Source: Perkinsela sp. CCAP 1560/9
Lineage: Eukaryota > Protista > Euglenozoa: Kinetoplastea
Assembly: GCA_965644495.1 (NCBI GenBank)
Contig: CBFFSA010000018.1
Location: 62,001-126,000, forward strand
Reading direction: 5' to 3'
Length of the DNA: 64,000 nt
A program made the translations under genes and the position numbers. The notes below the pieces were generated by a model that was given only the letters and a program-made list of their open reading frames with translations, was not told the DNA's origin and made no database searches. The number at the start of each line of letters is the position of its first letter. The stretch's first letter is position 1. This document shows positions 1 to 49,337 of the stretch, piece after piece.

Positions 1-417
1 CAGCCGGAGGGGCGTACTGCAACCGACTCGGTCCCAGTCGGTAGAGGTGGTCCAGGCAACTCACCATCTCTTTACGCAGCCGGAGGGGCGCACTGCAACC
101 GACCGCTGCCTCGCGATAATGCAAGGCAGAGTCACGCCCAGTGGTCCTCAAGGGAGGCCACCATGGCGCATAGCTCCCGGGAAGAGACAGGCGCGAGAAG
201 AAGAAAGCCGGGGAGGGAAGAAAACTCACTCAAGGAGTGAGCCGGGGAGGGGTGAAAAGTCGGAAGTACGTCCCCTACTTCCACGACAAAGAGGGACAGT
301 TTCCGCTAGCCGTCAGCCGGAAACGGGCATTTAAAAGGAAAATGTATGCCCGTTTCCGGGAAAAGAAAGGAAGGGCTAGCAAAATGTACCAACAAGGTAC
401 AGAAACTGTATCTTTAT
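1..417 (-). mobile_element. SL-headed non-autonomous retroelement (SINE-like), subfamily B; 3' part runs off the window
   Basis: Minus strand begins ATAAAGATACAGTTTCTGTACCTTGTTG (417-390), then GTACATTTTGCTAG and a CCGGAAACGGGCAT...ATGCCCGTTTCCGG hairpin. Homologous to 17250-17820. Interrupts an LRR gene. Confidence 0.85.
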
Positions 418-2029: not shown

Positions 2030-3179
2030 GGCCCCAGTTGTGTGGTCGGACGAGACCAATATCTCGCGCTTTCAAACGGGGAGGTCTTTGTGCATGAGGG
2101 ATTCCTGGGGAGGAACTAGGTGGAAAAGGGGTGATCCCTACGGTGAAATATGGAGGGGAGGACATCATGATTTGGACGTATGTCCTGAAGCGGTGTGGGG
2201 TATGTGTATAAAGATACAGTTTCTGTACCTTGTTGTTCATCCTTTCTTTCCACGGCAACAGGCATAGTCTTACTGTAATTATATGCCCGTTGCCGGCCGG
2301 CACTAAGGTCAGGACTGTCCCTCTTTTCGTTGAAGCAGGGGACGCGCCTTTCACCCTTCACCCCTCCCCGACTCACTCTCCTGGAGTGAGTGTGCTTCCC
2401 TCTCTCGGCTTTTCTTTCTCGTGTCTACCTTTCCGAGGAGGTAATGCGTCACGGTGGCCTCCCTTAAGGACCACTAGACGTGTCCTTCGCTACGACTTCC
2501 GGCTCTCCGCACCTGGCGGTCACCCAGCTCTCCACACCTCGACTCTGTCGCAGCTCTCTGCACCCGGATTGCCCCCGAAACTGTAATATGGGGATTACGC
2601 ATCCGGCTCTCTGCACCTGCACATGACAACCGAGCTCTCTGCACCTGGGACGCCAGCTCTCTGCACCCACTTGCCACAGGCGAAGGCGAACCCTCGCGTG
2701 ATCCACCCGTCGTATGCGGGGTAAGGACATGTAGTGAGGCAAATCTCTGCATTATAAGTGCATGAAAAAAACAACTCTGGTTCAAGGGAACCTGAAGATT
2801 CTTGAGAATCTTTTCCCCTCTATCGAAAGTATCGGTCTAAATCCTCCAAGGCTGTCTCCCAACAAGATAACGACCCCAAGAGCAATCCGTTGTGCGCAAC
2901 GGTACCTTCGGGGTACCAGGATTGAAGTTGTGCGGTGGCCCCCGCAATCCCCTGACTTTAATCCCATTGAGACTCAAGCGGCGCCTTGCAGCACACTATG
3001 ATCCCCCAAGAGGTGTCCGAGAGTTGTGGGAGAGGGTCAAGATGGAAAGGGCGGACATACCACCCTCAGCATGTCGTGCTCAGGTGGACTCCTGTAGATT
3101 GCGAAGACGAAAGATAATCGATGGTAGGACTGGAACTTCGACGTCTTTTTATCGGAGGCTCTTGACAATCGTATCTTGA
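2030..3179 (+). mobile_element. Degenerate IS630/Tc1/mariner transposase, interrupted by SL-headed element
   Basis: DDE motifs in broken frames: WSDET, VWG, QQDNDPK (~2860), WPPQSPDFNPIE (~2935-2970). TIRs not identified. Confidence 0.8.
2208..2771 (+). mobile_element. SL-headed non-autonomous retroelement, subfamily A (spliced-form copy)
   Basis: SL relic 2208-2235 joined directly to TTCATCC; GCTCTCTGCACC internal repeats; ends ATCTC-TGCATTATAAGTGCA-TGA-A-tail. Confidence 0.9.
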
Positions 3180-16282: not shown

Positions 16283-16743
16283 TTTTAATTACAGTCAAAT
16301 ATTCAATTACGATATTACCGGGGAGAAACTAAGTTATGTCAACAAAAGACGTATTAATTTAATTAACACATGAAATTAATAACACATGAATTAATCACAT
16401 GAAAAAAGCTTTGTAGAAGGCTATCTGAAGTTCCAAACTCTCTAAGTACGATACAGAAGCAGATTTCGAAAAAAATTACTTTTTATGAATAAAATTTTCA
16501 CAATCACGCAATGAGTCCTACAGTACATGTGCTACAGTATGTGCCTACAGTATGTGCTATTTCAGTGATCAGTCCAGTTGCAAAATTTTAGTTTCAGTAA
16601 ATGCTTTGCACCTCATGCTTGACGGTAGTAAGCGTACGTGCACTGTACCCGTGAGCTCGGCGTTGTTACGAAGCGAAAGACTCTCTATTCTAGAAGGCAG
16701 ATTAGTAAGCGTTACATCACCGCAGAACTTATTCACTGACAGT

Positions 16744-17181
16744 TTGTTCGTTCATGCACTTATAGTGCAGAGATTATGCTCACAAAGTCCGTGCCCGCAT
16801 ACGACGGGCGGATCAAGTGAGGGTTCGCCCTCGCCAGAGGTGTGCGGGTGCAGAGAGCTGGGGTCCCAGGTGCAGAGAGCTCGGTTGTCATGTGCAGGTG
16901 CAGAGAGCCGGATGCGTAATCCCCATATTACAGTTTCGGGGGCAATCCGGGTGCAGAGAGCTGCGACAGAGCCGAGGTGCAGAGAGCTGGGCGACCCCCA
17001 GGTGCGGAGAGCCGGGAGTCTCGTCGGCGGAGGACACGCCTAGTGGTCCTCAAGGGAGGCCACCGTGACGCATTACCTCCTCGGAAAGGTAGACACGAGA
17101 AAGAGAGCCGAGAGAGGGAAGCACACTCACTCCAGGGGAGTGAGTCGGGAAGGGATGAAGGGGTGGAAGCGCGTCCCCTGA
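16744..17181 (-). mobile_element. 5'-truncated non-autonomous retroelement, subfamily A
   Basis: Matches the 3' ~430 nt of 23959-24537; lacks the SL head; ends ATCTC-TGCACTATAAGTGCA-TGA plus a short extra tail. Confidence 0.9.
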
Positions 17182-17249
17182 ATCAACGAAAGTAAGGTTG
17201 CAGGAAGATGACAAAGATCAATACTACCCGTAAATTGATTGTACGACGT

Positions 17250-17820
17250 TTGATGCTCATGCGCTCGTTGGCGCAGAGATACAGCCCTTGATGCGACAGC
17301 CGATATCATCGGCACAATCCGTAATGACGGATGTCGCACCAAGGGGGTTTAGCACGGATTCTGTCGGTAGAGGGGGTCCAGGCAACTCGCCCTCTCTTTG
17401 CGCAGCCGGAGGGGTGCACTGCAACCGACTCGGTCCCAGTCGGTAGAGGTGGTCCAGGCAACTCACCACCTCTTTACGCAGCCGGAGGGGCGCACTGCAA
17501 CCGACCGCTGCCTCGCGATAAGACGAGGCAGAGCCACGCCCAGTGGTGCTCAAGGGAGGCCACCATGGCGCATGGCTCCCCGGGAAGGAAAAGGCGCGAA
17601 AGTAAGAAATACGGGGAGGGAAGAATACTCAATCAAAGAGTGAGCCGGGGAGGGGTGATGGGGTGGAAGCGCGTCCCCTACTTCGCCGAGAAAGAGGGAC
17701 AGTTTCGGCCTTAGTGCCGGCCGGCAACGGGCATATAAACAGTAAGACTATGCCCGTTGCCGGGGAAAGAAAAGATGAACTAAAGGAAAATGTACCAACA
17801 AGGTACAGAAACTGTATCTT
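17250..17820 (-). mobile_element. SL-headed non-autonomous retroelement, subfamily B
   Basis: SL relic 17820-17796, then GTACATTTTCCTTTAG, the 5' hairpin and two ~76-bp internal repeats; ends ATCTC-TGCGC-caacga-GCGCA-TGA. Confidence 0.9.
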
Positions 17821-18552
17821 CAACGAAATCAAACGCGGTGGAAGGCCTACGAGGTCTAATTCCCCGCTAAGCTTGTTGTTGTACACTGAAAATTCAAGTA
17901 GAGACCTAGGCAGTGTACTCCATTGAAATGAACCCATCAATCTTTTCCCTTTCGCCACAAACCCCAAGATTTCCCTTCCGCCCGAACAATCAACCCCTTC
18001 CCACTGGTGTGCAGGTACGGAGGTGTTCCAAGAAGGAAGCGGATTCACTATGTTACTTACCAAACGCTCAAGCTCGTACTCCAAGGGTAATGCCACACCC
18101 CTTACTTTCCCGGCCTTTCTGTTTTCGCCCGCTGTGTCGGAGAACTTAAACATGACGGAATGATAAGGCAGACGTAGCGAGTCTGTCGTGCGATCTGTGA
18201 AAATCACATTCATCGTAGTGGAAATACTAAATGCACAAGTAATAGTGTAAATTTTGTATACCTTTAATAGACGACGCGAATAAAGAATGTTTTGTGAATG
18301 CCAAAATATACCAAAATGTATCACAGCAACTTGAATATCTTGACTAATCCATTGTGATATCCTTTTAGACTGTGTTTTGTCGCGTCAAATCCTACATGTA
18401 CCGCATCGCGGAACAGACTCTGTTATCCTTCCCAGATTCTGTTATGTTATCTGATGAGGTTATTTCTCCTGTACATAAGAAGTACCCAGCAAAACATGTA
18501 GAAAACGACGTCGTACAAACCAGAAATGTATTTTAAACGCACTCACAATAGT

Positions 18553-23741: not shown

Positions 23742-23958
23742 ACAGGGTAGACTAATGTATTAAACGGGTTACAGGTTAACATACCGAGAATTCCCCCCCC
23801 CCCTACTTTTTCCCTACCAATCACATCATAATATATTGTTCCAGCGCGCCACAACTGTTGCTAACTGTAATTTCCGTTTCGGAAACATCGTAGATCATGT
23901 CCACATGTGCCCCTACAATTTGTAGGTTGCCCCGCAATTTCACATTGTTATGTATGTG

Positions 23959-24537
23959 TTTTATCATGCACTTATAGTGCAGAGATTTGCTCACCATGTC
24001 CTTATCCCGCATACGACGGGTGGACCATGTGAGGTTTCGTCCTCGCCGGAGGTGTGCGGGTGCGGAGAGCTGGCGTCCCAGGTGCAGAGAGCTCGGTTGT
24101 CATGTGCAGGTGCAGAGAGCCGGATGCGTAATCCCCATATTACAGTTTCGAGGGCAATCCGGGTGCAGAGAGCTGCGACAGAGCCGAGGTGCGGTGAGCT
24201 GGGCGACCGCCAGGTGCAGAGAGCCGAGTCTCGTCGGCGGAGGACACGTCTAGTGGTCCTCAAGGGAGGCCACCGTGACGCATGGCCCTCTCGGAGAGGA
24301 AAAAGACAAGTCGAAAAAAAGCCGAGAGGGGGAAGCACACTCACTCCAGGGGAGTGAGTCGGGGAGGGGTGAAGTGGTGAAAGCGCGTCCCCTGCTTCAG
24401 CGACAAGAGGGACAGTTCCGACCTTAGTGCCGGCCGGCAACGGGCATGAAAATACAGTAAGAGTATGCCCGTTGCCGGGGAAAGAAAGGATGAACTAAGG
24501 AAAAAGTACCAACAAGGTACAGAAACTGTATCTTTAT
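23959..24537 (-). mobile_element. SL-headed non-autonomous retroelement, subfamily A, full length
   Basis: SL relic 24537-24510, then GTACTTTTTCCTTAG; nearly identical to 48753-49324. Confidence 0.92.
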
Positions 24538-24603: not shown

Positions 24604-24630
<27 letters not shown>

Positions 24631-27600
24631 TATCATGTAGAAAATATTCTACAGAGATCAGACGGTGAATATGGGAGTTCCATATTACGCGCACAAAACG
24701 CGTTGAAATCACCTGACAGTCAGCGACTCACTCCCCAGAACTAACCTCCATCCACTGTTTGTTCTCGCGGTGCTGGAAAATTATGAAACTTCCCCGGAGA
24801 GCGCTACTCGTCATATTTCGGCGACACACTGCAACCGCTTCTTCATTTCCCATGTAGAGAGAGTTGAGCGTTCGGGCCGACATATGCAGTTTGCCTCTCG
24901 CTCCCACCTCGAAGACGAGTAGGAATGTGGTAGGATGGTCGAGTTTTCTAGAGTGATATAAACTCGTGTACTTTTCTATTTTGCGCTCGTGTGCGAACTC
25001 AAAATTCTCCTCCCAAGGGCAGGTAAGTTCTATAATGTATTCTTCTCCGTTAGATAGTTTCACCCATCCGTCAGGACGTAGCTCAGTATCAAGGTTCGTG
25101 AGCCACGCGGGGGTGGAGCGGAAGTGGGGGAGATCGAAGTGACATTGACTAGTGGAGGAGAATCGTTGTACGGAGTTCGCTAATGCCTGTAGTACCATGT
25201 TATGCCGTAGGGTATACCTCCCTTGTTCGAGTGACTTCCTACAACCAGATAGAATATGCCGCGTAGTTTGTGTCTCAGTGTCACATATGGGACATTTATC
25301 GCTCGCATGTCGATACGCCCCACCTACGAAGAGATGCCCTGGTTGGGAGCGGCGTCTCGGTAAGCACTGAGGATGTGAACCGCGAAAGCGATTCACTCTT
25401 GAGGTTGCATAGGGCGGCGGCGAAGACTCTCGCAAGGTCTGCTTCCGTTGCGATTCTGAACCATCGTCCTGCTACGGCAGTACGCCGTTGGACGGCTTCC
25501 GTGAGGTGTCGCTCGTATTCGCTTCCAAGGAGTCTTCGGACGTTACTATGGCTTGTACTGTGCATATCCGTCGGCGGGCGAATGTATCCTGCTCTCCTTT
25601 TGTTCGCTTCTCGCCTGATGCGCTCACGTAAAGCGTGCTGGACCTCGGGATCACGCGATTTATCCATTTGTTCCATTGTCCCCACAGTGGAAAGAAGCCA
25701 AAGTTTTGACAGACTCATGAGATTCCAGCCATGCTCTGAATAGAGCAGCTCACTAGTTGCTGATTTCGCTACGTTTAACCATTTCCGAATTTCGCGTGTG
25801 GCGCATCGCTGTAGACGAAGTACGTGATTGAAGGTAAGGCATGAGTTCACGACGAAGGAATACCGCAGACGAGAGATGATGCCGTTATTGTATATCCACA
25901 GGCGCGCGGGAAGGTCATGTGCGCTGGAAGATATATTACGCAACCAGGCTCGCAGACGGGTTCGTAGTTTTAGAAAGAGTGTCTTGCCTTGTTGAGCACC
26001 GGGTGCGAGCGTCATGCCTAAAAATGTGCTACCATTATCACATATGTGTGGGATAGGTGACGTGCCGATCATGATCTGTGGTCGGCGTGTCATATATCCA
26101 GAGTCTTGCGTCATCGCCATGTGTTGCAGCCGGCATTTTTTCACGTTTAGTTTCATCCCAATATCGCTTAGAACTTTGACGAGTGCGTTTGTAGCATTCT
26201 GCATTTCCTGGGGGGTATTTGTCAGAATAGTGAGGTCATCTGCGAAGGCTTTTAGAAAAATTTCTTTCGCATTCCACGTGATCCCGTATTCGGGGCAACT
26301 TGAACGGACAAAACGCAGAACTAGCTCCATCGCCAAGTCGAATAAAATAGGTGAAAGCGTATCTCCCTGCAATACACCACGACCTATCTCAATAGACTTC
26401 GTGAGTCCTTCTGCACATTTAATTTGTATAGACGCTCGTTCGTACAGCGCTTTGATGTAGTTAATGAGGATCGGTGAGACGCGCGCCCATTTTAAGGCCT
26501 GAAATAAAATTGTATGGGGTATAGATCCAAACGCGTTTTTGATATCAAACTAGGCAAGCACGTATTGCCTTTTGTGGCGCCGCTGGTGCTCGAGGAGCTC
26601 GCAAAGGACCTGGGTGTGCTCAACTGTCCCATTCATATGCGGCAAGAAGCCTTTTTGTATTGTTGTGTCCAGGGCATTGGAATCCAGGGAATGCTGAAGG
26701 ATACGGTGACTGAGGATTGAGTGGAAAAGCTTCCCAATGCAGCTAGTCAAGCTTATCGGCCGCCAGTTTTCCATACTTGAGGTGGGGCCCCCTTTGTGGA
26801 TAAGTCGAGTGACCGCAGTTTTCCAGGTTGGAGGGCATACACCAAATTTTAGGACATCATTAAACACCTGTGCCATGTGAGTAAAGACAGGGGCGCAGCG
26901 CTTTAGCAGCGCGTTCGATACAGTGTCCGAGCCTGGGGCAGCCCCAGAGCGTTTGGATGCGACGGCTGCTGCGATCATGTCTGAGTCAATATCTGACCAT
27001 TGCATCTCATCAAGGGGAATTGGTTTCGTAAATTCTGCGGGAGGAATCTTGTGTATCTCTTCTGGTCTAGACATTGAGCCCACAAAGAATCTTTCAACCT
27101 CCTGTACAGGAACTGTAGGGTAGGACGTCTCAGTTTCTGAGGTAGATGGGTCGACGCGATCTAAGCATTCGCCCGCGGCTGTCCAGGGATTTCGCTGGAA
27201 TCGCGTAAGAGCCCACCGTCGATCGATTTCTTTCCTCTGCATACTGGATTCTTCCATTTACTGCTTTAGTGCCTTTTCGGCTTCCTTTATTTTCCCTCGT
27301 TGCTTGTTTCTCGCAGGACCCTTCATGAACGTTAGCGCACGTTTAAGTTGTCGAACGTGTTGACTGAGTACTTTCACTGTGCGTTCAATGGCTAAGGGTC
27401 GTGAGTTTCTTCGGGCTCTGCCAGTTCTGGTCCGTATAAGAAAGCCGTGCGTCGGATCGTTTTCCCGTGCGGCCTCGAATGCAGTTACAGCGAGGATTGC
27501 TGAGAGTATTTCAGCTTGCGACAGGGCGTCCTCTTTGTTTCGCGCCAGGTGGATATACGAGTTGCAGCGTTCCTCGATCTTCGCAATAATACTCTCCCAC

Positions 27601-29477
27601 TGTTCCTCTGTGAAACGGACTAAAACGCGACCTCCATTCATTGTGCGGAATGTTTCGAGTAGGTTCTGCAGTTCAGGGAGAGGTCGGGTAGCCGGGACTT
27701 ACCGGACACGAGGGATGCGCTGCAATATCGTGTGTTCGCAGTTTCCTTCTGGTGGGGGAGGTAAAGGTAAGGGCAGAGGCGTGGGATCTGTTGCGGACTG
27801 CACAAGGGGTAAAGAAGGTGAGGAGCGGCGTACAGAAGGGGAATCATGTTGCGGGGCGTGGACAAGTGGTGCATTCCGCACAGGGCTCAGTATTGGACTC
27901 GAGCGATTCGAGGGGTTTGTGTGAACTGGGGGGTAGGTTGTTGCGCGTGGAGGGGGCGGTAGTGAAGCTTTTGCGGCGCGTTCCGCATCACCCATTGCAG
28001 GGCACAGTATATTTCTCGTGGTCCAGCATATGGCAGAGTACGCTACTTCAGCGACTTTGAGGAGAACTCCTTTCTGGCAGCATTGATGTTTACATGTTGC
28101 CTTGTCCTTACATTTATGAGCGCAGTTGCGACGAGGGGCTGTTGGGGCAGGGGTGTTGTTGTCATTGCTGGTGTGCAGGTCTGGAGAGGTACGGACGGGT
28201 TCGCGGAGTACAACCTCCGTGCTAGGTTGTATGACACCATTTTTGCAACATCGATGCTTGCACTGAGCTTTGTTGCTACATATGTGCCGACAGGGGCGAT
28301 AATTGACTTCATTGGTTGATGTTTGTGTGTGGTGTGTGGCGTCATCCATGCATCCTAGTGAGGGCGGATTTACGGTCGGGAGCTCCGGATCCCTGACCTC
28401 TTCGAAGTGTCCGATGTCTGGTGTGGTATGCTGATCGGTGTCTATGGATAAGTCTGCTGGTAGTGGACTACTTGCTCGAGCTATGGGTGGTTCCACGAGG
28501 GGTAGCACTGGTTGAGGACTACTTTGGGCATTGTAATGGGGACCCCCACTTTGCAACACTTGTGCAGACAATTTCTTTTGTCGCGGCATGTGTGTTTGCA
28601 CGGTCTTCTGTGAGAAGTAAGTGAGGGTTCCATAGGGGCAACGTCCTCGGGAGAGGGAAGAGACACGTTAGGCGGAAGAGATCCTTCGTGTCGTACTTTG
28701 CAACATGCGTGGAGACACGATGTTTTGTCCCGGCATTTATAAGCGCATGAGGCACGTGGTTCGAGAGCGTGTTTTGAGGCATATGATGGCGGTGACACCT
28801 TGTAAGAGTCATCTCGGATCCTATAGGGTGCGTCGTAGGTGATCTCTGGGTGACCCCGTAGTAGTTCAATGGGTTGTGTTTTTCGAGTTACGTGTGTGAT
28901 TTGGAATTTTCGTAATCCTGGGATGTCACTACCACATAATTTCTTCGTGACCGCTTTGCCGAGCGCGTTCGAAGAGGAGTACACTGCGTTAAGCTGCATG
29001 AACGAATCCCTGTAGGCGGAACTCCAGCTGGCGTGACAAAACGTGCGACTTGGGTTTCCCGTTTCTTGGTATTTTAGGTGTTCACATGCGTTGTTTTCAA
29101 TGACATCTTGAATTGTACACGATTTGATTATCAGACCATCACTTCTTTTGCTTTCCGACTTCAAGGTTTTGCCGATCGAGGCTTCAGCCGTGTGGACACT
29201 CGAGAAGAACTCTCGTTCTGTGAGGGCAATGGCTGCGGCATGCGTGTCTGGGAAATATGACCATGTGACGCTGTCCGAGGGGCGGATTTTGACGGGCATC
29301 GCTCGACTTTGGATGAAGTGAAAGCTCTGGGGATGTCGCTGCGCGCTGACAGGTCCTCGAGGGAGGCCGTCGTGCGCGATGGGAGCCGGTGAGGTGACAT
29401 TGGAGGCCATGCTCCGGAAGATAAAGTTAGTACAAAATTGAAAATAATTCAACAAGGTACAGAAACTGTATCTTTAT
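24604..29477 (-). mobile_element. RLE-type (R2 group) non-LTR retrotransposon, SL-headed, degenerate single ORF
   Basis: SL relic 29477-29450; ATG at 29410; four Cys motifs; RT motifs (APGSD, WRPISL, QKGF, DIKNAFGSIPH, QGDTLSP, FADD); CCHC knuckle CPICD...HILSGC; endonuclease RPDG...IELTCPWEE...KIEKY; (TA)n tail. Has two in-frame stops and about three frameshifts. Confidence 0.95.
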
Positions 29478-30552: not shown

Positions 30553-32295
30553 TCACCGAAACACATCATACTCCCCCGGGTCACACCCCTCCACCTCCCT
30601 CCACCTCTTAAACCTCTCCACCACCCTCCCCCCTTCCTGGGGTTTATAAAAAATGGGCTGGTAAAAATGCCGCAGCTCCTTTTCCTGCACCCTCCGCATC
30701 CCGGCCCGGGCCCCCCTCCCCACCACAGGGCCCTCCAGCGGGTCGATCCCAAACCCCCCGTGGTGACCGAACCCGCTGAACAGCCGTGAGGCGTGCAGCG
30801 GGCCTGTCTGGAGGGCGTGAGAGGGTTTCCATTTCATTGAAGATAAATTTAAAGAAGAAGAAAAAGAAGAAGAAGAAGAAGAAGAAGAAGAAGAAGAAGA
30901 AGCGCCTTCCCCCGAGGATGCAGAGCCCAACGACACGTTGTGCCTACCCTTCGCTACGCGCTTCGTGTTCGGTTGAGGCTCTTTCGGAGCGGCCCTGGCC
31001 CCCTCCGCGGTGAGTGTGCTGTGGAGCTGGAGGAACAGGGCCCGGGCCTGGGCGTCGCTGCAGGTGGTGCAGCGTACCCAGGGGAGGGCGGCGGCCTTCC
31101 CGAGGGCGAAGATGCGCGGGAAGGACTGCAGCTGGAGGAACCGGGTCACTTTGAGGTGTCCGGTGGGGGAGAGGTGGGGGGAGAGGAAGGAGGGGCTGCT
31201 GCTGTTGTCGTTGTTAGAGAGGAAGAGAGGCTCCGAGAGACGAGGGGTGCCGCCGGTGCAAAAGAAGATGTAGTCGAAGTTAGGGGCGTGGGAGGTGTCA
31301 TTCGAAGGGGAGGAAAATGTAGAGGAAGAGGGTGAGGGATTTGTTGTCTCGGGATCGGGAGAGGGGGGTTGTTGGTCGGTGGGGGGTGGCGTTGGGGGGT
31401 TCTTGGCACCAAAGTAGATTTGGTAGAGAATGGAGCGTCGACGGTGAAGGAGGGAAAGGTTGTTGGATTTGGGGCTAAATACGTGGGTGAGGGAGTATTT
31501 CGGGTGCGAGGTAGGGCTGGCTACCTCCTCCGAGGGGGCTGCGGAAAAAAACCACGACCAACGAAACAGCGAAGGAAGCCATCTCCATGGTTTTGTTACG
31601 GTCACATTCACCACTTCCCGGTTGTAGTGCACAGTCACACTGGACTCCCGGTCCAAACCTTCAGTAACGTAGCGCTGTACCAGGGGAGGGGTGCGCGGTA
31701 CAAGCGTGTCTGTGCGGTGAAACAGATGTATTTCCTTCCCCTTTTCCCCGTAGCTCTCCGCGAGGGATTTCGCCATGTGCACTCCCATGGGCCCTCCGCC
31801 CACGACGGCTATCCGACGTACCGACTTCGATCCAATAAACCGGTTCAGCGCACGGATCTCCGCAATACGTTGAGCCTTTGTGCGGGCAGCAGAGTGGAAC
31901 GGGAAGGCTTGGGCCTCCCCCGGGGACAGGACCAGCAGGTCGTATGGGATCACCGTGCCGTCCCGCAGTCGGACGGAATCCGAGGCTACCTCGGTGACGG
32001 TGGAGGTGATTACGTTCCCCCGGGCGAGGTAGTACCGGTGGAGGGGTAGAATATTGTGGGCGTACTTTTCGAGATGATCACTCCAGGGCTGGGTGAACAG
32101 CGGGATGAGGTTTGGTGTGTGCTGAAAGTAGTTTTTGTGGTCAATGAGCGTCACGCGGAGGAGGGAATTCGTGTAGTACGCCAAGGTGGCCCCGGTATAA
32201 CCTCCGCCGATGATCACGAGGTGGGGGGCGGAACTTGGGGAGGGGAGTTCCAGATCTTTCTCGGTCAGGAAGGGGTCCTTGGGACGGGATAGCAT
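30553..32295 (-). CDS. FAD/NAD(P)-dependent oxidoreductase (AIFM2/FSP1-like)
   Basis: VIIGGGYTG and AVVGGGPMG Rossmann motifs; YDLLVLSPG; IFALG. Confidence 0.85.
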   Translation of the reverse strand: MLSRPKDPFLTEKDLELPSPSSAPHLVIIGGGYTGATLAYYTNSLLRVTLIDHKNYFQHTPNLIPLFTQPWSDHLEKYAHNILPLHRYYLARGNVITSTVTEVASDSVRLRDGTVIPYDLLVLSPGEAQAFPFHSAARTKAQRIAEIRALNRFIGSKSVRRIAVVGGGPMGVHMAKSLAESYGEKGKEIHLFHRTDTLVPRTPPLVQRYVTEGLDRESSVTVHYNREVVNVTVTKPWRWLPSLFRWSWFFSAAPSEEVASPTSHPKYSLTHVFSPKSNNLSLLHRRRSILYQIYFGAKNPPTPPPTDQQPPSPDPETTNPSPSSSTFSSPSNDTSHAPNFDYIFFCTGGTPRLSEPLFLSNNDNSSSPSFLSPHLSPTGHLKVTRFLQLQSFPRIFALGKAAALPWVRCTTCSDAQARALFLQLHSTLTAEGARAAPKEPQPNTKRVAKGRHNVSLGSASSGEGASSSSSSSSSSSSFSSSLNLSSMKWKPSHALQTGPLHASRLFSGFGHHGGFGIDPLEGPVVGRGARAGMRRVQEKELRHFYQPIFYKPQEGGRVVERFKRWREVEGCDPGEYDVFR

Positions 32296-48225: not shown

Positions 48226-48752
48226 ATTAAAGATTAATTTTACTTGAAGATAGCATTTGCGGATAAGATTCCCAGGAGTGCCTATTTTCGATCAAAATAA
48301 AAGTAGATTTCGGAAGACAAAGGCGACTGTCTACTTTTCCTTTTCGTATTCTTAGCTCACATACTTTCACCTCTCCTAGCGTTATCCGATTCTAGTAAAA
48401 AGCAACGCTAGGATAGGGAGTATAGTTCGCTAGACATTTCCTCAAAATATGTTTTGTCACATGAAATATCCAGCATTGTTGCCATCAAGAGAAAATATGG
48501 GAAAACAATACACCAGTCCAACTTAACATGCCCCCCTCAAAGAGAAAGCTAGATGATCAAAGGATATTTTACAGTTGTATCCATTACATTTGATTGCTTT
48601 ACAGTTACGTTCTGCAATTACAAACCAATTCGTAGCTTCAAGTCGACGGCACCAACCAATTCGTTTTGGTGAAAAAAACGGAGTTATTATTACGCAGTTT
48701 TAAATATTATCTTAGTCTCTTCAATTTCTACAACTTTTTTGCCGCTACTAGG

Positions 48753-49337
48753 TTTTATCATGCACTTATAGTGCAGAGATTTGCTCACCATGTCCTTATC
48801 CCGCATACGACGGGTGGATCATGTGAGGTTTCGTCCTCGCCGGAGGTGTGCGGGTGCGGAGAGCTGGCGTCCCAGGTGCAGAGAGCTCGGTTGTCATGTG
48901 CAGGTGCAGAGAGCCGGATGCGTAATCCCCATATTACAGTTTCGGGGGCAATCCGGGTGCAGAGAGCTGCGACAGAGCCGAGGTGCGGAGAGCTGGGCGA
49001 CCGCCAGGTGCAGAGAGCCGAGTCTCGTCGGCGGAGGACACGTCTAGTGGTCCTCAAGGGAGGCCACCGTGACGCATGACCCTCTCGGAGAGGAAAAAGA
49101 CAAGTCGAAAAAAAGCCGAGAGGGGGAAGCACACTCACTCCAGGGGAGTGAGTCGGGGAGGGGTGAAGTGGTGAAAGCGCGTCCCCTGCTTCAGCGACAA
49201 GAGGGACAGTTCCGACCTTAGTGCCGGCCGGCAACGGGCATGAAAATACAGTAAGAGTATGCCCGTTGCCGGGGAAAGAAAGGATGAACTAAGGAAAAAG
49301 TACCAACAAGGTACAGAAACTGTACTGTACAGAAACT
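48753..49337 (-). mobile_element. SL-headed non-autonomous retroelement, subfamily A, with doubled SL fragment
   Basis: Starts AGTTTCTGTAC-AG-TACAGTTTCTGTACCTTGTTG; body nearly identical to 23959-24537. Confidence 0.92.

What the first reader, a model, noticed from the sequence alone, without database searches (positions are those of the whole stretch)
24628..24660. Covarying 3' terminal hairpin links the LINE to both short-element subfamilies
Seen on the sense strand: LINE ATCTC-TGTAGAA-tatt-TTCTACA-TGATAA; subfamily A ATCTC-TGCACT-ata-AGTGCA-TGA(TAA); subfamily B ATCTC-TGCGC-caacga-GCGCA-TGA. The flanks are fixed and the stems differ by compensatory changes. Established: stringent LINE/SINE pairs share a 3' stem-loop read by the RT. 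Inference: this ~25-30 nt motif is the cis signal for mobilisation, and is a candidate minimal tag for RT-based insertion tools.
Basis: partly seen in the sequence, partly recalled or inferred. Interest (0 to 1): 0.8.

Follow-up and report, generated by a model that had tools for sequence, protein, structure and literature searches.

The report
Shared 3' hairpin of LINEs and SINEs
A small bulged RNA hairpin, kept in shape while its letters change, ends every member of a large family of R2-like jumping genes and of the short non-coding elements that ride on them in this kinetoplastid genome, so it is very probably the handle the copying enzyme grips; the principle is known from other LINE/SINE pairs, this instance is new.

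Summary
The motif (A/T/C)(T/C)CTC, stem, loop, stem, TGA sits at window 24633-24658 (- strand) at the end of a decayed LINE. It also ends four copies of short element A and one of B (6 hits, 0.1 expected).

Genome-wide there are 233 hits against 24 for the control pattern. LINE 3' ends were also collected by protein homology alone, without using the motif. Most of them carry the hairpin, with at least 16 different stem sequences.

On 50 distinct tails, 96% of cells pair and 5 of 6 pairs show changes on both sides. G.U wobbles occur only on the sense strand, so the RNA is what folds.

The LINE is an R2-like element with a restriction-like endonuclease. SINEs A, B and C share its insertion register in leucine-rich-repeat codons and its spliced-leader head. 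SINE A carries the exact hairpin of an intact LINE subfamily (L029).

However, the shared 3' module is larger than 25-30 nt. Most members also have an upstream hairpin with a conserved 7-nt loop inside an outer stem. Binding by the reverse transcriptase is inferred, not shown.

The scan has reported this hairpin before, on other DNA of this genome. It is a new instance of the known stringent LINE/SINE principle.

The parts
24633..24658 (-). Terminal hairpin HP2 of the LINE: ATCTC (24654-24658), 5' arm TGTAGAA (24647-24653), loop TATT (24643-24646), 3' arm TTCTACA (24636-24642), TGA (24633-24635).
   Evidence: RNA fold -8.5 kcal/mol, z -2.5. CM hit of 38.3 bits.
24604..24632 (-). 3' tail after the hairpin: TAACATA followed by (TA)n. 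Its length varies between copies of this subfamily.
   Evidence: Sister copies end TAACATAC.., TAACATACATAC.., TAACATATATAT..
24664..24713 (-). Upstream part of the 3' module: outer stem P1 (GGTGA 24709-24713 with TCACC 24664-24668), enclosing HP1 (ACGCG-TTTTGTG-CGCGT, 24687-24703) and a second small hairpin (24669-24685).
   Evidence: RNAfold, RNAalifold, HP1 catalogue.
24728..29477 (-). Decayed copy of an R2-like LINE with a restriction-like endonuclease (RLE). The ORF is broken into at least 6 pieces. The 5' end is a 28-nt spliced-leader relic (29450-29477).
   Evidence: Pfam RVT_1. tblastn to the intact L007 protein gives 50-55% identity in several frames. SL head.
23958..24537 (-). SINE A copy. 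HP2 ATCTC-TGCACT-ata-AGTGCA-TGA at 23964-23986, tail TAAAAC 23958-23963. P1 and HP1 (CCCG-TCGTATG-CGGG) lie upstream. SL head at 24510-24537.
48752..49324 (-). SINE A copy, 99.3% identical to the copy at 23958-24530. HP2 at 48758-48780.
16743..17189 (-). 5'-truncated SINE A copy. HP2 at 16752-16774, tail ACGAACAAA. Its 3' flank reads L-S-V-N-K-F-C-G (LRR register).
2208..2774 (+). SINE A copy with the variant stem TGCATT/AGTGCA (U.G wobble). HP2 at 2743-2765.
17249..17823 (-). SINE B copy. HP2 ATCTC-TGCGC-caacga-GCGCA-TGA at 17257-17280, tail GCATCAAA. Upstream, an outer stem TGCGAC/GTCGCA encloses ATCCG-TCATTA-CGGAT and GCCGAT-gat-ATCGGC.
1..414 (-). SINE B-like copy whose 3' part runs off the window edge. 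Only the head and body are visible.

Best explanation
The motif is the terminal element of a structured 3' module carried by a whole superfamily of R2-like non-LTR retrotransposons in this kinetoplastid genome. These elements have a single ORF with reverse transcriptase, a CCHC finger and a C-terminal restriction-like endonuclease. At least three non-coding SINE families (A, B, C) carry the same module.

On the RNA the motif forms a bulged hairpin. A lower helix is proposed between UC of CUC and GA of UGA, with the U of UGA bulged out. Above it sits an upper stem of 4-8 pairs that always starts U-A, and then a free loop of 2-12 nt.

Most members also have, 10-45 nt upstream, a hairpin closed by C-G and G-C with a conserved 7-nt loop (T-Y-N-N-N-T-G), held inside an outer stem.

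Inferred mechanism. The LINE protein binds this module on spliced-leader-capped RNA. It nicks its target just 5' of the Leu codon of LxxNxFxG repeats. It then starts target-primed reverse transcription on the short A/U-rich tail right after the hairpin, with slippage that produces the subfamily-specific short repeats. SINE RNAs that present the same module are copied in trans.

What is shown and what is inferred:
- Shown: the structure is under selection on the sense strand, and LINEs and SINEs share the module, the head and the target register.
- Inferred: protein binding, the initiation site, and which parts are sufficient.
For: Chance excluded:
- 6 hits against 0.1 expected in the window; 233 against 24 in the genome.

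Covariation:
- A1, 18 tails: 95% of cells paired, 4 of 6 pairs with changes on both sides, 0 of 500 shuffles as high.
- A2, 50 distinct tails: 96% paired, 5 of 6 pairs and 52 cells with changes on both sides. Slid controls give 22-54% paired.
- RNAalifold finds both hairpins by itself, without being given the structure.
- On a protein tree of 24 LINEs there are double changes at four of the six pair positions (one each at pairs 3 and 4, two at pair 5, at least one at pair 6), at least five in all.

Unbiased sample:
- About 70 LINE 3' ends were taken by homology to the C-terminal domain (43-100% identity). They show at least 16 different stems, all pairing.

Strand:
- The 11 wobble pairs at pair 2 are all G.U on the sense strand. 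They would be A.C mismatches on the other strand.

Upstream hairpin (HP1):
- 29 distinct versions. Pairs 1-2 are nearly invariant (28 of 29). Pair 3 is G-C 11, C-G 11, A-T 6, T-A 1.

LINE identity:
- Pfam RVT_1 and zf-RVT. Best solved relatives are R2 proteins, aligned from the RT to the C-terminus.

Same machinery for LINEs and SINEs:
- 27 of 95 3' flanks carry N-x-[FLIM]-x-G starting 13-21 nt after TGA, against 2-3 of 95 in controls. This holds for SINE A (7/22), B (9/24), C (3/11) and for LINEs.
- All start with the same 28-nt SL relic.

Partner:
- SINE A's ATCTC-TGCACT-ata-AGTGCA-TGA differs by one wobble-keeping base from the tail of L028/L029, and L029 has an open frame of 1637 aa.

Tails:
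- Tails are short repeats: (TA)n, (AAAT)n, (ATC)n, (TG)n, (ACAA)n. Two copies show the tail re-copied from within the 3' arm (L098, L033).
Against: - There is no biochemical or genetic evidence that the protein binds the hairpin.
- The lower helix and the bulge are invariant, so they have no covariation support.
- No LINE with SINE B's stem (TGCGC/GCGCA) was found among about 70 sampled LINE ends. Either recognition tolerates different stems or the partner was not sampled.
- Two LINE groups (L062/L064, L126) lack the loop-conserved upstream hairpin, so the module is not uniform.
- A few LINE-like loci (L065, L123, L124) show no motif; they may be truncated or decayed.
- More distant environmental relatives (30-33% identity) have a different, oligo(A)-ended 3' UTR. 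No support from outside this genome was obtained.
- Hairpin types follow LINE lineages, so the number of independent events is modest.
Confidence: 0.7

Rival explanations
1. The true recognition element is the upstream module (outer stem plus the hairpin with the conserved 7-nt loop). The terminal hairpin only sets the start point of reverse transcription or protects the RNA 3' end. The 25-30 nt motif would then be necessary at most, not sufficient.
For: - The only conserved loop sequence lies in HP1 (T-Y-N-N-N-T-G), and sequence-specific protein contacts usually need fixed bases.
- SINEs A, B, B' and C all carry HP1 and an outer stem.
- SINE B has two 67-nt repeats in its body.
Against: HP2 with CTC and GA is the only feature present in every LINE family sampled, including those without the typical HP1 (L062, L064, L126). 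Its flanks are the most invariant bases of the 3' UTR.
Confidence: 0.15
2. The hairpin serves the RNA rather than the RT. It would act as a stability, 3'-end-processing, export or translation element of the element's mRNA, and SINEs would inherit it by descent from LINE tails.
For: - Kinetoplastid mRNAs are controlled after transcription through 3' UTR elements (general knowledge; PMC6597758 came up in a search but was not read).
- The hairpin lies in the 3' UTR, and selection acts on the sense strand.
Against: - Non-coding SINEs of unrelated body keep it at the very 3' end, with the same distance to the insertion junction.
- The copies end a few nucleotides after it, not at a poly(A) site.
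- The tail stutter begins inside its 3' arm (L098, L033).
- All of this ties it to the start of cDNA synthesis.
Confidence: 0.08
3. There is no function. The similarity would be common descent of SINE tails from LINE tails, plus chance palindromes.
For: Hairpin types are largely monophyletic on the LINE protein tree. SINE A's tail is nearly identical to one LINE tail.
Against: - At least 16 stem sequences all pair, at 43-100% protein identity.
- 52 cells show changes on both sides, and slid controls collapse.
- Loops vary freely while CTC and GA stay fixed.
Confidence: 0.03
4. The invariant ATG formed by the last stem base plus TG (..A-TGA) is a start codon that lets the interrupted LRR gene be translated downstream of the insert.
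For: ATGA is invariant in nearly all types. In L007 the frame from this ATG runs into the LRR codons.
Against: - The offsets of the LRR motif after TGA fall in all three frames: 10 with remainder 1, 11 with remainder 2, and 6 with remainder 0.
- Several tails contain in-frame stops (L009, L044).
- Two families have ATAG or ATTG instead.
Confidence: 0.02

Closest known systems
Stringent-type LINE/SINE pairs of the L2 clade (eel UnaL2/UnaSINE1, zebrafish ZfL2-1/-2)
   Same: - LINE and SINE share a conserved 3' stem-loop followed by short tandem repeats instead of poly(A).
- In those systems the stem-loop is required for retrotransposition and is bound by the ORF2 protein (PMC1636434, PMC4176376).
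- An internal-loop or bulge-like irregularity in the stem matters in UnaL2.
   Different: - Those LINEs use an N-terminal APE endonuclease and insert without site preference.
- Here the enzyme is R2-like with a C-terminal restriction-like endonuclease, and the target is an LRR codon register.
- Here the RNAs are spliced-leader capped, the loop is free to vary, and a second hairpin carries the conserved loop.
- No functional data exist here.
R2 elements and their non-autonomous SIDEs
   Same: - Same enzyme architecture: the protein aligns to solved R2 proteins from the RT to the C-terminus.
- The R2 protein binds structured 3' UTR RNA to start TPRT, and non-autonomous partners keep the 3' end (PMC3414825).
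- R2 3' UTR modules are used as tags for transgene insertion (PRINT, PMC11371274).
   Different: - SIDEs are internal-deletion derivatives with a 5' ribozyme and sit in 28S rDNA.
- The SINEs here share no body sequence with the LINE and have an SL head. They gave no Rfam ribozyme hit and sit in LRR genes.
- From my own knowledge, R2 3' UTRs are several hundred nt long; the module here is about 60-100 nt.
CRE clade of kinetoplastids (SLACS, CZAR, CRE1/2)
   Same: They are kinetoplastid non-LTR elements with a restriction-like endonuclease and a link to the spliced leader. This rests on my own knowledge.
   Different: - Those elements insert into the SL RNA gene at nt 11/12 and end in A-rich tails.
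- The elements here are dispersed in LRR genes, carry the SL relic at their own 5' end, and end in a hairpin plus short repeats.
- Their phylogenetic relation was not tested.

Membership tests
Stringent-type LINE/SINE 3'-tail partnership | LINE and SINE share the 3' terminal sequence or structure. | tested here: met
   SINE A's tail differs from the L028/L029 LINE tail by one base over about 29 nt.
Stringent-type LINE/SINE 3'-tail partnership | A conserved stem-loop is maintained by compensatory change. | tested here: met
Stringent-type LINE/SINE 3'-tail partnership | The 3' end is made of short tandem repeats rather than poly(A). | tested here: met
   (TA)n, (AAAT)n, (ATC)n, (TG)n and (ACAA)n tails. 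SINE tails are short and A-rich.
Stringent-type LINE/SINE 3'-tail partnership | The stem-loop is required for retrotransposition and is bound by the LINE protein. | not testable with these tools
   Needs TPRT, EMSA or cell assays.
R2-like (RLE-bearing) non-LTR retrotransposon | A single ORF with an RT followed by a CCHC finger and a C-terminal restriction-like endonuclease. | tested here: met
   - L007 ORF of 1613 aa has RVT_1 at 925-1185 and zf-RVT at 1393-1449.
- Residues 863-1578 align to residues 413-1134 of an R2 protein (9nl3_A).
- A PD..E..K-like motif (RPDGW..ELTSPWEEN..RK) is visible. Catalytic residues were judged by eye only.
R2-like (RLE-bearing) non-LTR retrotransposon | Site-specific insertion. 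| tested here: met
   The LRR signature lies at a fixed distance in 27 of 95 3' flanks, against 2-3 of 95 in controls. Many copies lie elsewhere, so this is a preference rather than an absolute rule.
R2 proper (28S rDNA clade) | Insertion in the 28S rRNA gene. | tested here: not met
   Flanks are LRR codons or other sequence.
R2 SIDE-type non-autonomous element | The body is derived from the LINE by internal deletion. | tested here: not met
   blastn of the LINE 3' 700 nt finds no SINE. The SINE B query matches the LINE only in the 25-nt SL head (SINE A finds no match in the LINE).
R2 SIDE-type non-autonomous element | A 5' self-cleaving (HDV-like) ribozyme. | tested here: inconclusive
   No Rfam family at gathering score or at E up to 1. 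A diverged ribozyme is not excluded.
CRE clade (SLACS/CZAR/CRE) | Insertion into the SL RNA gene at nt 11/12. | tested here: not met
   452 SL-relic sites are dispersed over the contigs, with different upstream flanks.

The most novel reading that the evidence does not exclude
A bulged hairpin of about 30 nt (CUC, U-stem-A, UGA plus a few A/U) is by itself sufficient, and is read by shape rather than by stem sequence, for a whole superfamily of R2-like enzymes that write into protein-coding LRR repeats. It would then be one of the smallest natural retrotransposition tags, portable to any RNA. It would also explain how unrelated spliced-leader-capped RNAs became SINEs simply by acquiring it.
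Probability: 0.2. Interest if true: 0.75.

Novelty: new variant of a known kind. Interest (0 to 1): 0.58.

Why it matters
- It gives a compact, comparatively well-supported RNA signal for an R2-like retrotransposon family outside animals. The natural series of at least 16 stem variants amounts to a ready-made mutational scan.
- It links three SINE families to their drivers in a protist where SINEs had not been described, as far as my searches show.
- It suggests how site-specific R2-like enzymes choose their template with a module much shorter than animal R2 3' UTRs. That bears on RNA-templated insertion tools (PRINT-type approaches, PMC11371274).
- The principle itself (stringent 3' stem-loop recognition) is established, so the value lies in the new enzyme class, the new host and the small size, not in a new mechanism.

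Tried and rejected
- **Metagenome scan.** The pattern was HP1 loop plus ATCTCTG..CATGA. All 27 hits are chance matches in unrelated, mostly bacterial-looking contigs without the hairpins. The pattern was narrow, and records of this genome may be hidden.
- **Protein relatives.** The four closest (43-68% identity) come from assembly ERZ24900291. This is the same organism: L068 is identical to L010, flank included. They are therefore not independent.
- **More distant relatives.** Environmental relatives at 30-33% identity have 3' UTRs of about 270 nt ending in oligo(A), without the motif.
- **Rfam.** Nothing at gathering score, and nothing meaningful at E up to 1, for SINEs or the LINE 3' UTR.
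- **SL RNA gene.** The pattern AACGCT..CAGTTTCTGTAC found only two element copies. The claim that the relic starts at SL nt 12 stays untested.
- **ATG after the stem as a restart codon.** Rejected by the frame counts.
- **AUC/GAU extension of the helix.** Rejected as general, because many types have TGAA.
- **Genome CM scan.** Only 150 of 7907 candidates were scored, so its 141 hits are a lower bound and not a census.
Full report
**1. The observation**

On the minus strand, window 24633-24658 reads ATCTC-TGTAGAA-TATT-TTCTACA-TGA. The tail TAACATA(TA)n follows. The motif lies 69 nt after the stop codon of a reverse-transcriptase ORF that is broken into several pieces.

The pattern ATCTCTG..CATGA occurs six times in the window, against 0.1 expected:
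- Three copies of the A-type hairpin TGCACT-ata-AGTGCA, and one variant TGCATT.
- One B-type hairpin, TGCGC-caacga-GCGCA.
- The LINE itself.

Each of the five non-LINE hits sits at the 3' end of a non-coding element about 570 nt long. A and B share about 290 nt at the 5' side (77-83% identity), differ in the rest, and share the terminal motif again.

**2. What the elements are**

The genome has 21 Mb in 110 contigs. Every element, LINE and short, begins with the same 28 nt (ATAAAGATACAGTTTCTGTACCTTGTTG). This contains the kinetoplastid spliced-leader core ACAGTTTCTGTAC. The 23-mer occurs 452 times in the genome, dispersed over the contigs.

Earlier notes of the scan call the organism Perkinsela-like. 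The Perkinsela genome paper reports hundreds of spliced-leader fragments, some associated with retrotransposons (PMC5601477).

Intact LINE copies elsewhere in the genome (L007, 1613 aa; L010, 1578 aa) have this layout:
- repeated Cys-His motifs at the N-terminus;
- RVT_1;
- a zf-RVT type CCHC finger;
- a C-terminal domain with a PD..E..K-like motif.

The best solved relatives are R2 proteins, aligned from the RT to the C-terminus. The LINE is therefore R2-like and bears a restriction-like endonuclease. I did not determine its clade.

**3. More than chance, and more than the three stems**

In the whole genome the pattern has 233 hits, against 24 for the reversed control. The intact A hairpin accounts for 43 of these. 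The TGCAG class accounts for 31, and the window's TGTAGAA type for 6. Most of the rest are B.

To avoid circularity I collected LINE 3' ends by homology to the C-terminal 299 residues only. That search gave 133 matches at 35-100% identity. I read about 70 of their downstream regions.

Most of them carry the motif. The stems seen are:
- TGTAGAA/TTCTACA, TGCAGT/ACTGCA, TGCAGC/GCTGCA, TGCACT/AGTGTA;
- TGCAGG/CCTGTA, TGCAGA/TCTGTA, TGCAGA/TCTGCA, TGCCTT/AAGGCA and TGCCTT/AAGGTA;
- TGCTATT/AATAGTA, TGCCGG/CCGGTA, TACAGG/CCTGTA, TACAGT/ACTGTA;
- TAGTGATA/TATCACTA, TAGTGT/ACACTA, TATCT/AGATA, TACT/AGTA, TGGTGA/TCACTA.

Loops run from 2 to 12 nt and share no sequence. The invariant parts are CTC before the stem, the first pair T-A, and GA after it. 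TGA becomes TAGA or TTGA in two distant families.

A third SINE family, C, has TGCAGG-tcttgc-CCTGCA and shares the 5' module of A and B.

**4. Covariation**

On 18 tails, 95% of cells pair and 4 of 6 pairs change on both sides. On 50 distinct tails aligned to a covariance model built from these:
- 96% of cells pair;
- 5 of 6 pairs and 52 cells change on both sides;
- none of 500 shuffles reaches the score;
- sliding the partner by 1-3 columns drops pairing to 22-54%.

That alignment is fitted to the model, which favours the structure. However, the stems listed above can be read directly in the raw sequences. RNAalifold on a plain MAFFT alignment of ten whole 3' UTRs also finds the same helix by itself.

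On a maximum-likelihood tree of 24 LINE C-terminal domains, the fewest changes per pair position are as follows:

| Pair | Fewest changes | Kind of change |
|---|---|---|
| 1 | 0 | none |
| 2 | 3 | G-C to G.U |
| 3 | 1 | both sides |
| 4 | 1 | both sides |
| 5 | 2 | both sides |
| 6 | 4 | mixed |

That makes at least five independent double changes (one each at pairs 3 and 4, two at pair 5, at least one at pair 6) in this nearer subset alone.

All wobble pairs are G.U on the sense strand, 11 of them at pair 2. On the other strand they would be A.C mismatches, so the selected fold is that of the sense RNA.

**5. The motif is part of a larger module**

Folding each 3' UTR alone and folding the alignment show a common architecture:
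- an outer stem, P1;
- inside it, a hairpin HP1 closed by C-G and G-C, with a 7-nt loop T-Y-N-N-N-T-G (TTTTGTG, TTCAGTG, TCATATG, TTGAATG, TCGTATG and others);
- often a further small hairpin;
- a linker of 3-10 nt;
- the terminal hairpin HP2.

Among 29 distinct HP1 versions, the two closing pairs are nearly invariant (28 of 29). The third pair is G-C 11, C-G 11, A-T 6, T-A 1, so it is always paired.

SINE A (CCCG-TCGTATG-CGGG), SINE B' (the same), SINE C (GCG-TTGATTG-CGC) and SINE B (ATCCG-TCATTA-CGGAT) all have HP1 inside an outer stem. Two LINE groups (L062/L064, L126) lack the typical HP1 loop but keep HP2.

HP2 is therefore the universal core, and HP1 is a frequent second element. What LINEs and SINEs share is about 60-100 nt, not 25-30 nt.

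RNAalifold also pairs UC of CUC with GA of UGA and leaves the U bulged. The exceptions TAGA and TTGA keep GA with a 2-nt bulge. This fits a bulged hairpin, but these bases never vary, so it remains inference.

**6. Are the short elements moved by these LINEs?**

Three independent features are shared.

(a) The 28-nt spliced-leader relic at the 5' end.

(b) The 3' module.

(c) The target. Of 95 distinct 3' flanks, 27 have the LRR signature N-x-[FLIM]-x-G starting 13-21 nt after TGA. Controls give 2 of 95 for shuffled flanks and 3 of 95 for reverse-complemented flanks. The signature is seen for SINE A (7/22), B (9/24), C (3/11) and for LINE types.

Read by eye, insertions lie just 5' of the Leu codon of LxxNxFxG, for LINEs and SINEs alike. 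This agrees with earlier notes of the scan on LRR targeting.

SINE A's ATCTC-TGCACT-ata-AGTGCA-TGA differs by one C/T from the tail of LINE subfamily L028/L029, and the change keeps a wobble pair. L029 has an open frame of 1637 aa. Two A copies in the window are 99.3% identical, so activity is recent.

SINE C has the stem of L030/L032/L038. No sampled LINE has B's stem. B's linker (AAGGGCTGT) and tail (ACATCAAA) resemble those of the TGCAGT group (L025, L008/L020).

The LINE copy in the window is decayed, and its stem matches neither SINE.

**7. The tails**

After TGA each subfamily has its own short A/T-rich tail or tandem repeat, with copy-to-copy length variation:
- TAACATA(TA)n;
- CAAAT(AAAT)n;
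- TATC(ATC)n;
- TTAAATGA(TG)n;
- ACAAACAAA;
- ATATCA plus a variable number of A.

These are seen. In L098 and L033 the tail is copied again, starting inside the 3' arm. A 95-nt, 5'-truncated SINE B directly abuts a LINE tail in L014.

This is the pattern of initiation with slippage right after a recognised stem-loop, as described for stringent LINEs. From my own knowledge, that is the slippage model of Kajikawa and Okada (2002). The papers I consulted here are PMC1636434 and PMC4176376.

**8. Mechanism and rivals**

I think the most likely reading (about 0.7) is this. The LINE protein binds the 3' module on spliced-leader-capped RNA, nicks the LRR target, and primes cDNA synthesis on the tail just after HP2. 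SINE RNAs presenting the module are copied in trans.

- Shown: selection for the sense-strand fold, and the shared head, module and target.
- Inferred: binding, the start site, and sufficiency.

The main rival (0.15) is that HP1 and P1 carry the specificity while HP2 only sets the start. A role in RNA stability or processing (0.08) fits poorly with the junction position and the stutter. Pure descent (0.03) is contradicted by the covariation. A restart-codon role for the invariant ATG (0.02) is contradicted by the frame counts.

**9. Comparison with what is known, and novelty**

The principle is that of stringent LINE/SINE pairs (PMC4176376, PMC1636434) and of R2 3' UTR recognition with non-autonomous SIDEs (PMC3414825). 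The differences are:
- an R2-like enzyme with SINEs that are not deletion derivatives;
- a spliced-leader head instead of a ribozyme-defined or Pol III 5' end;
- an LRR codon target;
- a very small universal hairpin with a free loop, plus a second hairpin that carries the conserved loop.

Rfam 15 has no matching family. I found no relatives with the motif outside this genome, but that search was narrow.

The scan had already reported the shared 3' hairpin and the SL head on other DNA of this genome (s1-695551, s1-686816, s1-682875). My results were obtained independently and agree with those notes.

I rate this a new variant of a known kind. The tool idea, a minimal tag for RT-based insertion, is legitimate as a hypothesis (compare PRINT, PMC11371274). 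It rests on an untested sufficiency, to which I give about 0.2.

Noticed in passing
window 29450-29477, 24510-24537, 2208-2235, about 17796-17823 (SINE B head, 2 nt shorter), 49297-49324; L001:1480-1530 (-): - All elements start with a 28-nt spliced-leader relic.
- The copy at 2208 lacks the 15 nt GTACTTTTTCCTTAG that follow the relic in other A copies. That segment is a polypyrimidine tract plus AG, which suggests an alternative trans-splice acceptor.
- In L001 the bases just upstream of the usual 28-nt relic read AACGCT, as in trypanosomatid leaders (from memory); this may be a longer relic or chance.
- No SL RNA gene with AACGCT was found in the assembly.
   Followed up: partly
window 24059-24224, 48853-49018, 16847-17012 (-), 2502-2667 (+): The body of SINE A holds 5-6 boxes GCTCTCYGCACC (22 hits in the window against 0.04 expected). 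They repeat the CTCTGCAC of the terminal motif's flank and 5' arm. They might be extra half-sites for the same protein, or relics of stuttered copying.
   Followed up: partly
L003:6549-6640; L021 3' end; L048; L062; L097; G000:C53:22240-38373; G000:C1:2477645-2492945: Elements often lie head to tail, with the SL head of the next element starting right after the tail of the previous one. There are also arrays with spacing of 5.37 kb and 5.09 kb. This fits a target that survives insertion, since recognition lies downstream of the nick, or template jumping by the RT.
   Followed up: no
L001:1500-1800 (-): A SINE B copy interrupts an IS30-like transposase reading frame. Earlier notes of the scan describe IS30 elements in this eukaryotic genome.
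   Followed up: no
window 24430-24475, 17735-17780, 49220-49265; L006:5905-5950: The shared 5' module of the SINEs begins with a 14-bp hairpin (CCGGCAACGGGCAT..ATGCCCGTTGCCGG). It changes on both sides in other copies (CCGGAAACGGGCAT..ATGCCCGTTTCCGG). No Rfam family matches it.
   Followed up: partly
L098 and L033 3' ends: Tails were re-copied from within the 3' arm of the hairpin (CATGAACATCA..A10..CATGAACATCAA; repeated CCTGTACAATATATAATA). This is a trace of repeated initiation or slippage.
   Followed up: no
L068, L069 (ENA ERZ24900291): A public assembly holds the same LINE copies with identical flanks. It is the same organism or strain, not an independent relative.
   Followed up: yes
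window 30553-32295 (-): An intact 580-aa ORF with pyridine nucleotide-disulphide oxidoreductase domains lies about 1.1 kb upstream of the LINE's 5' end (29477).
   Followed up: no
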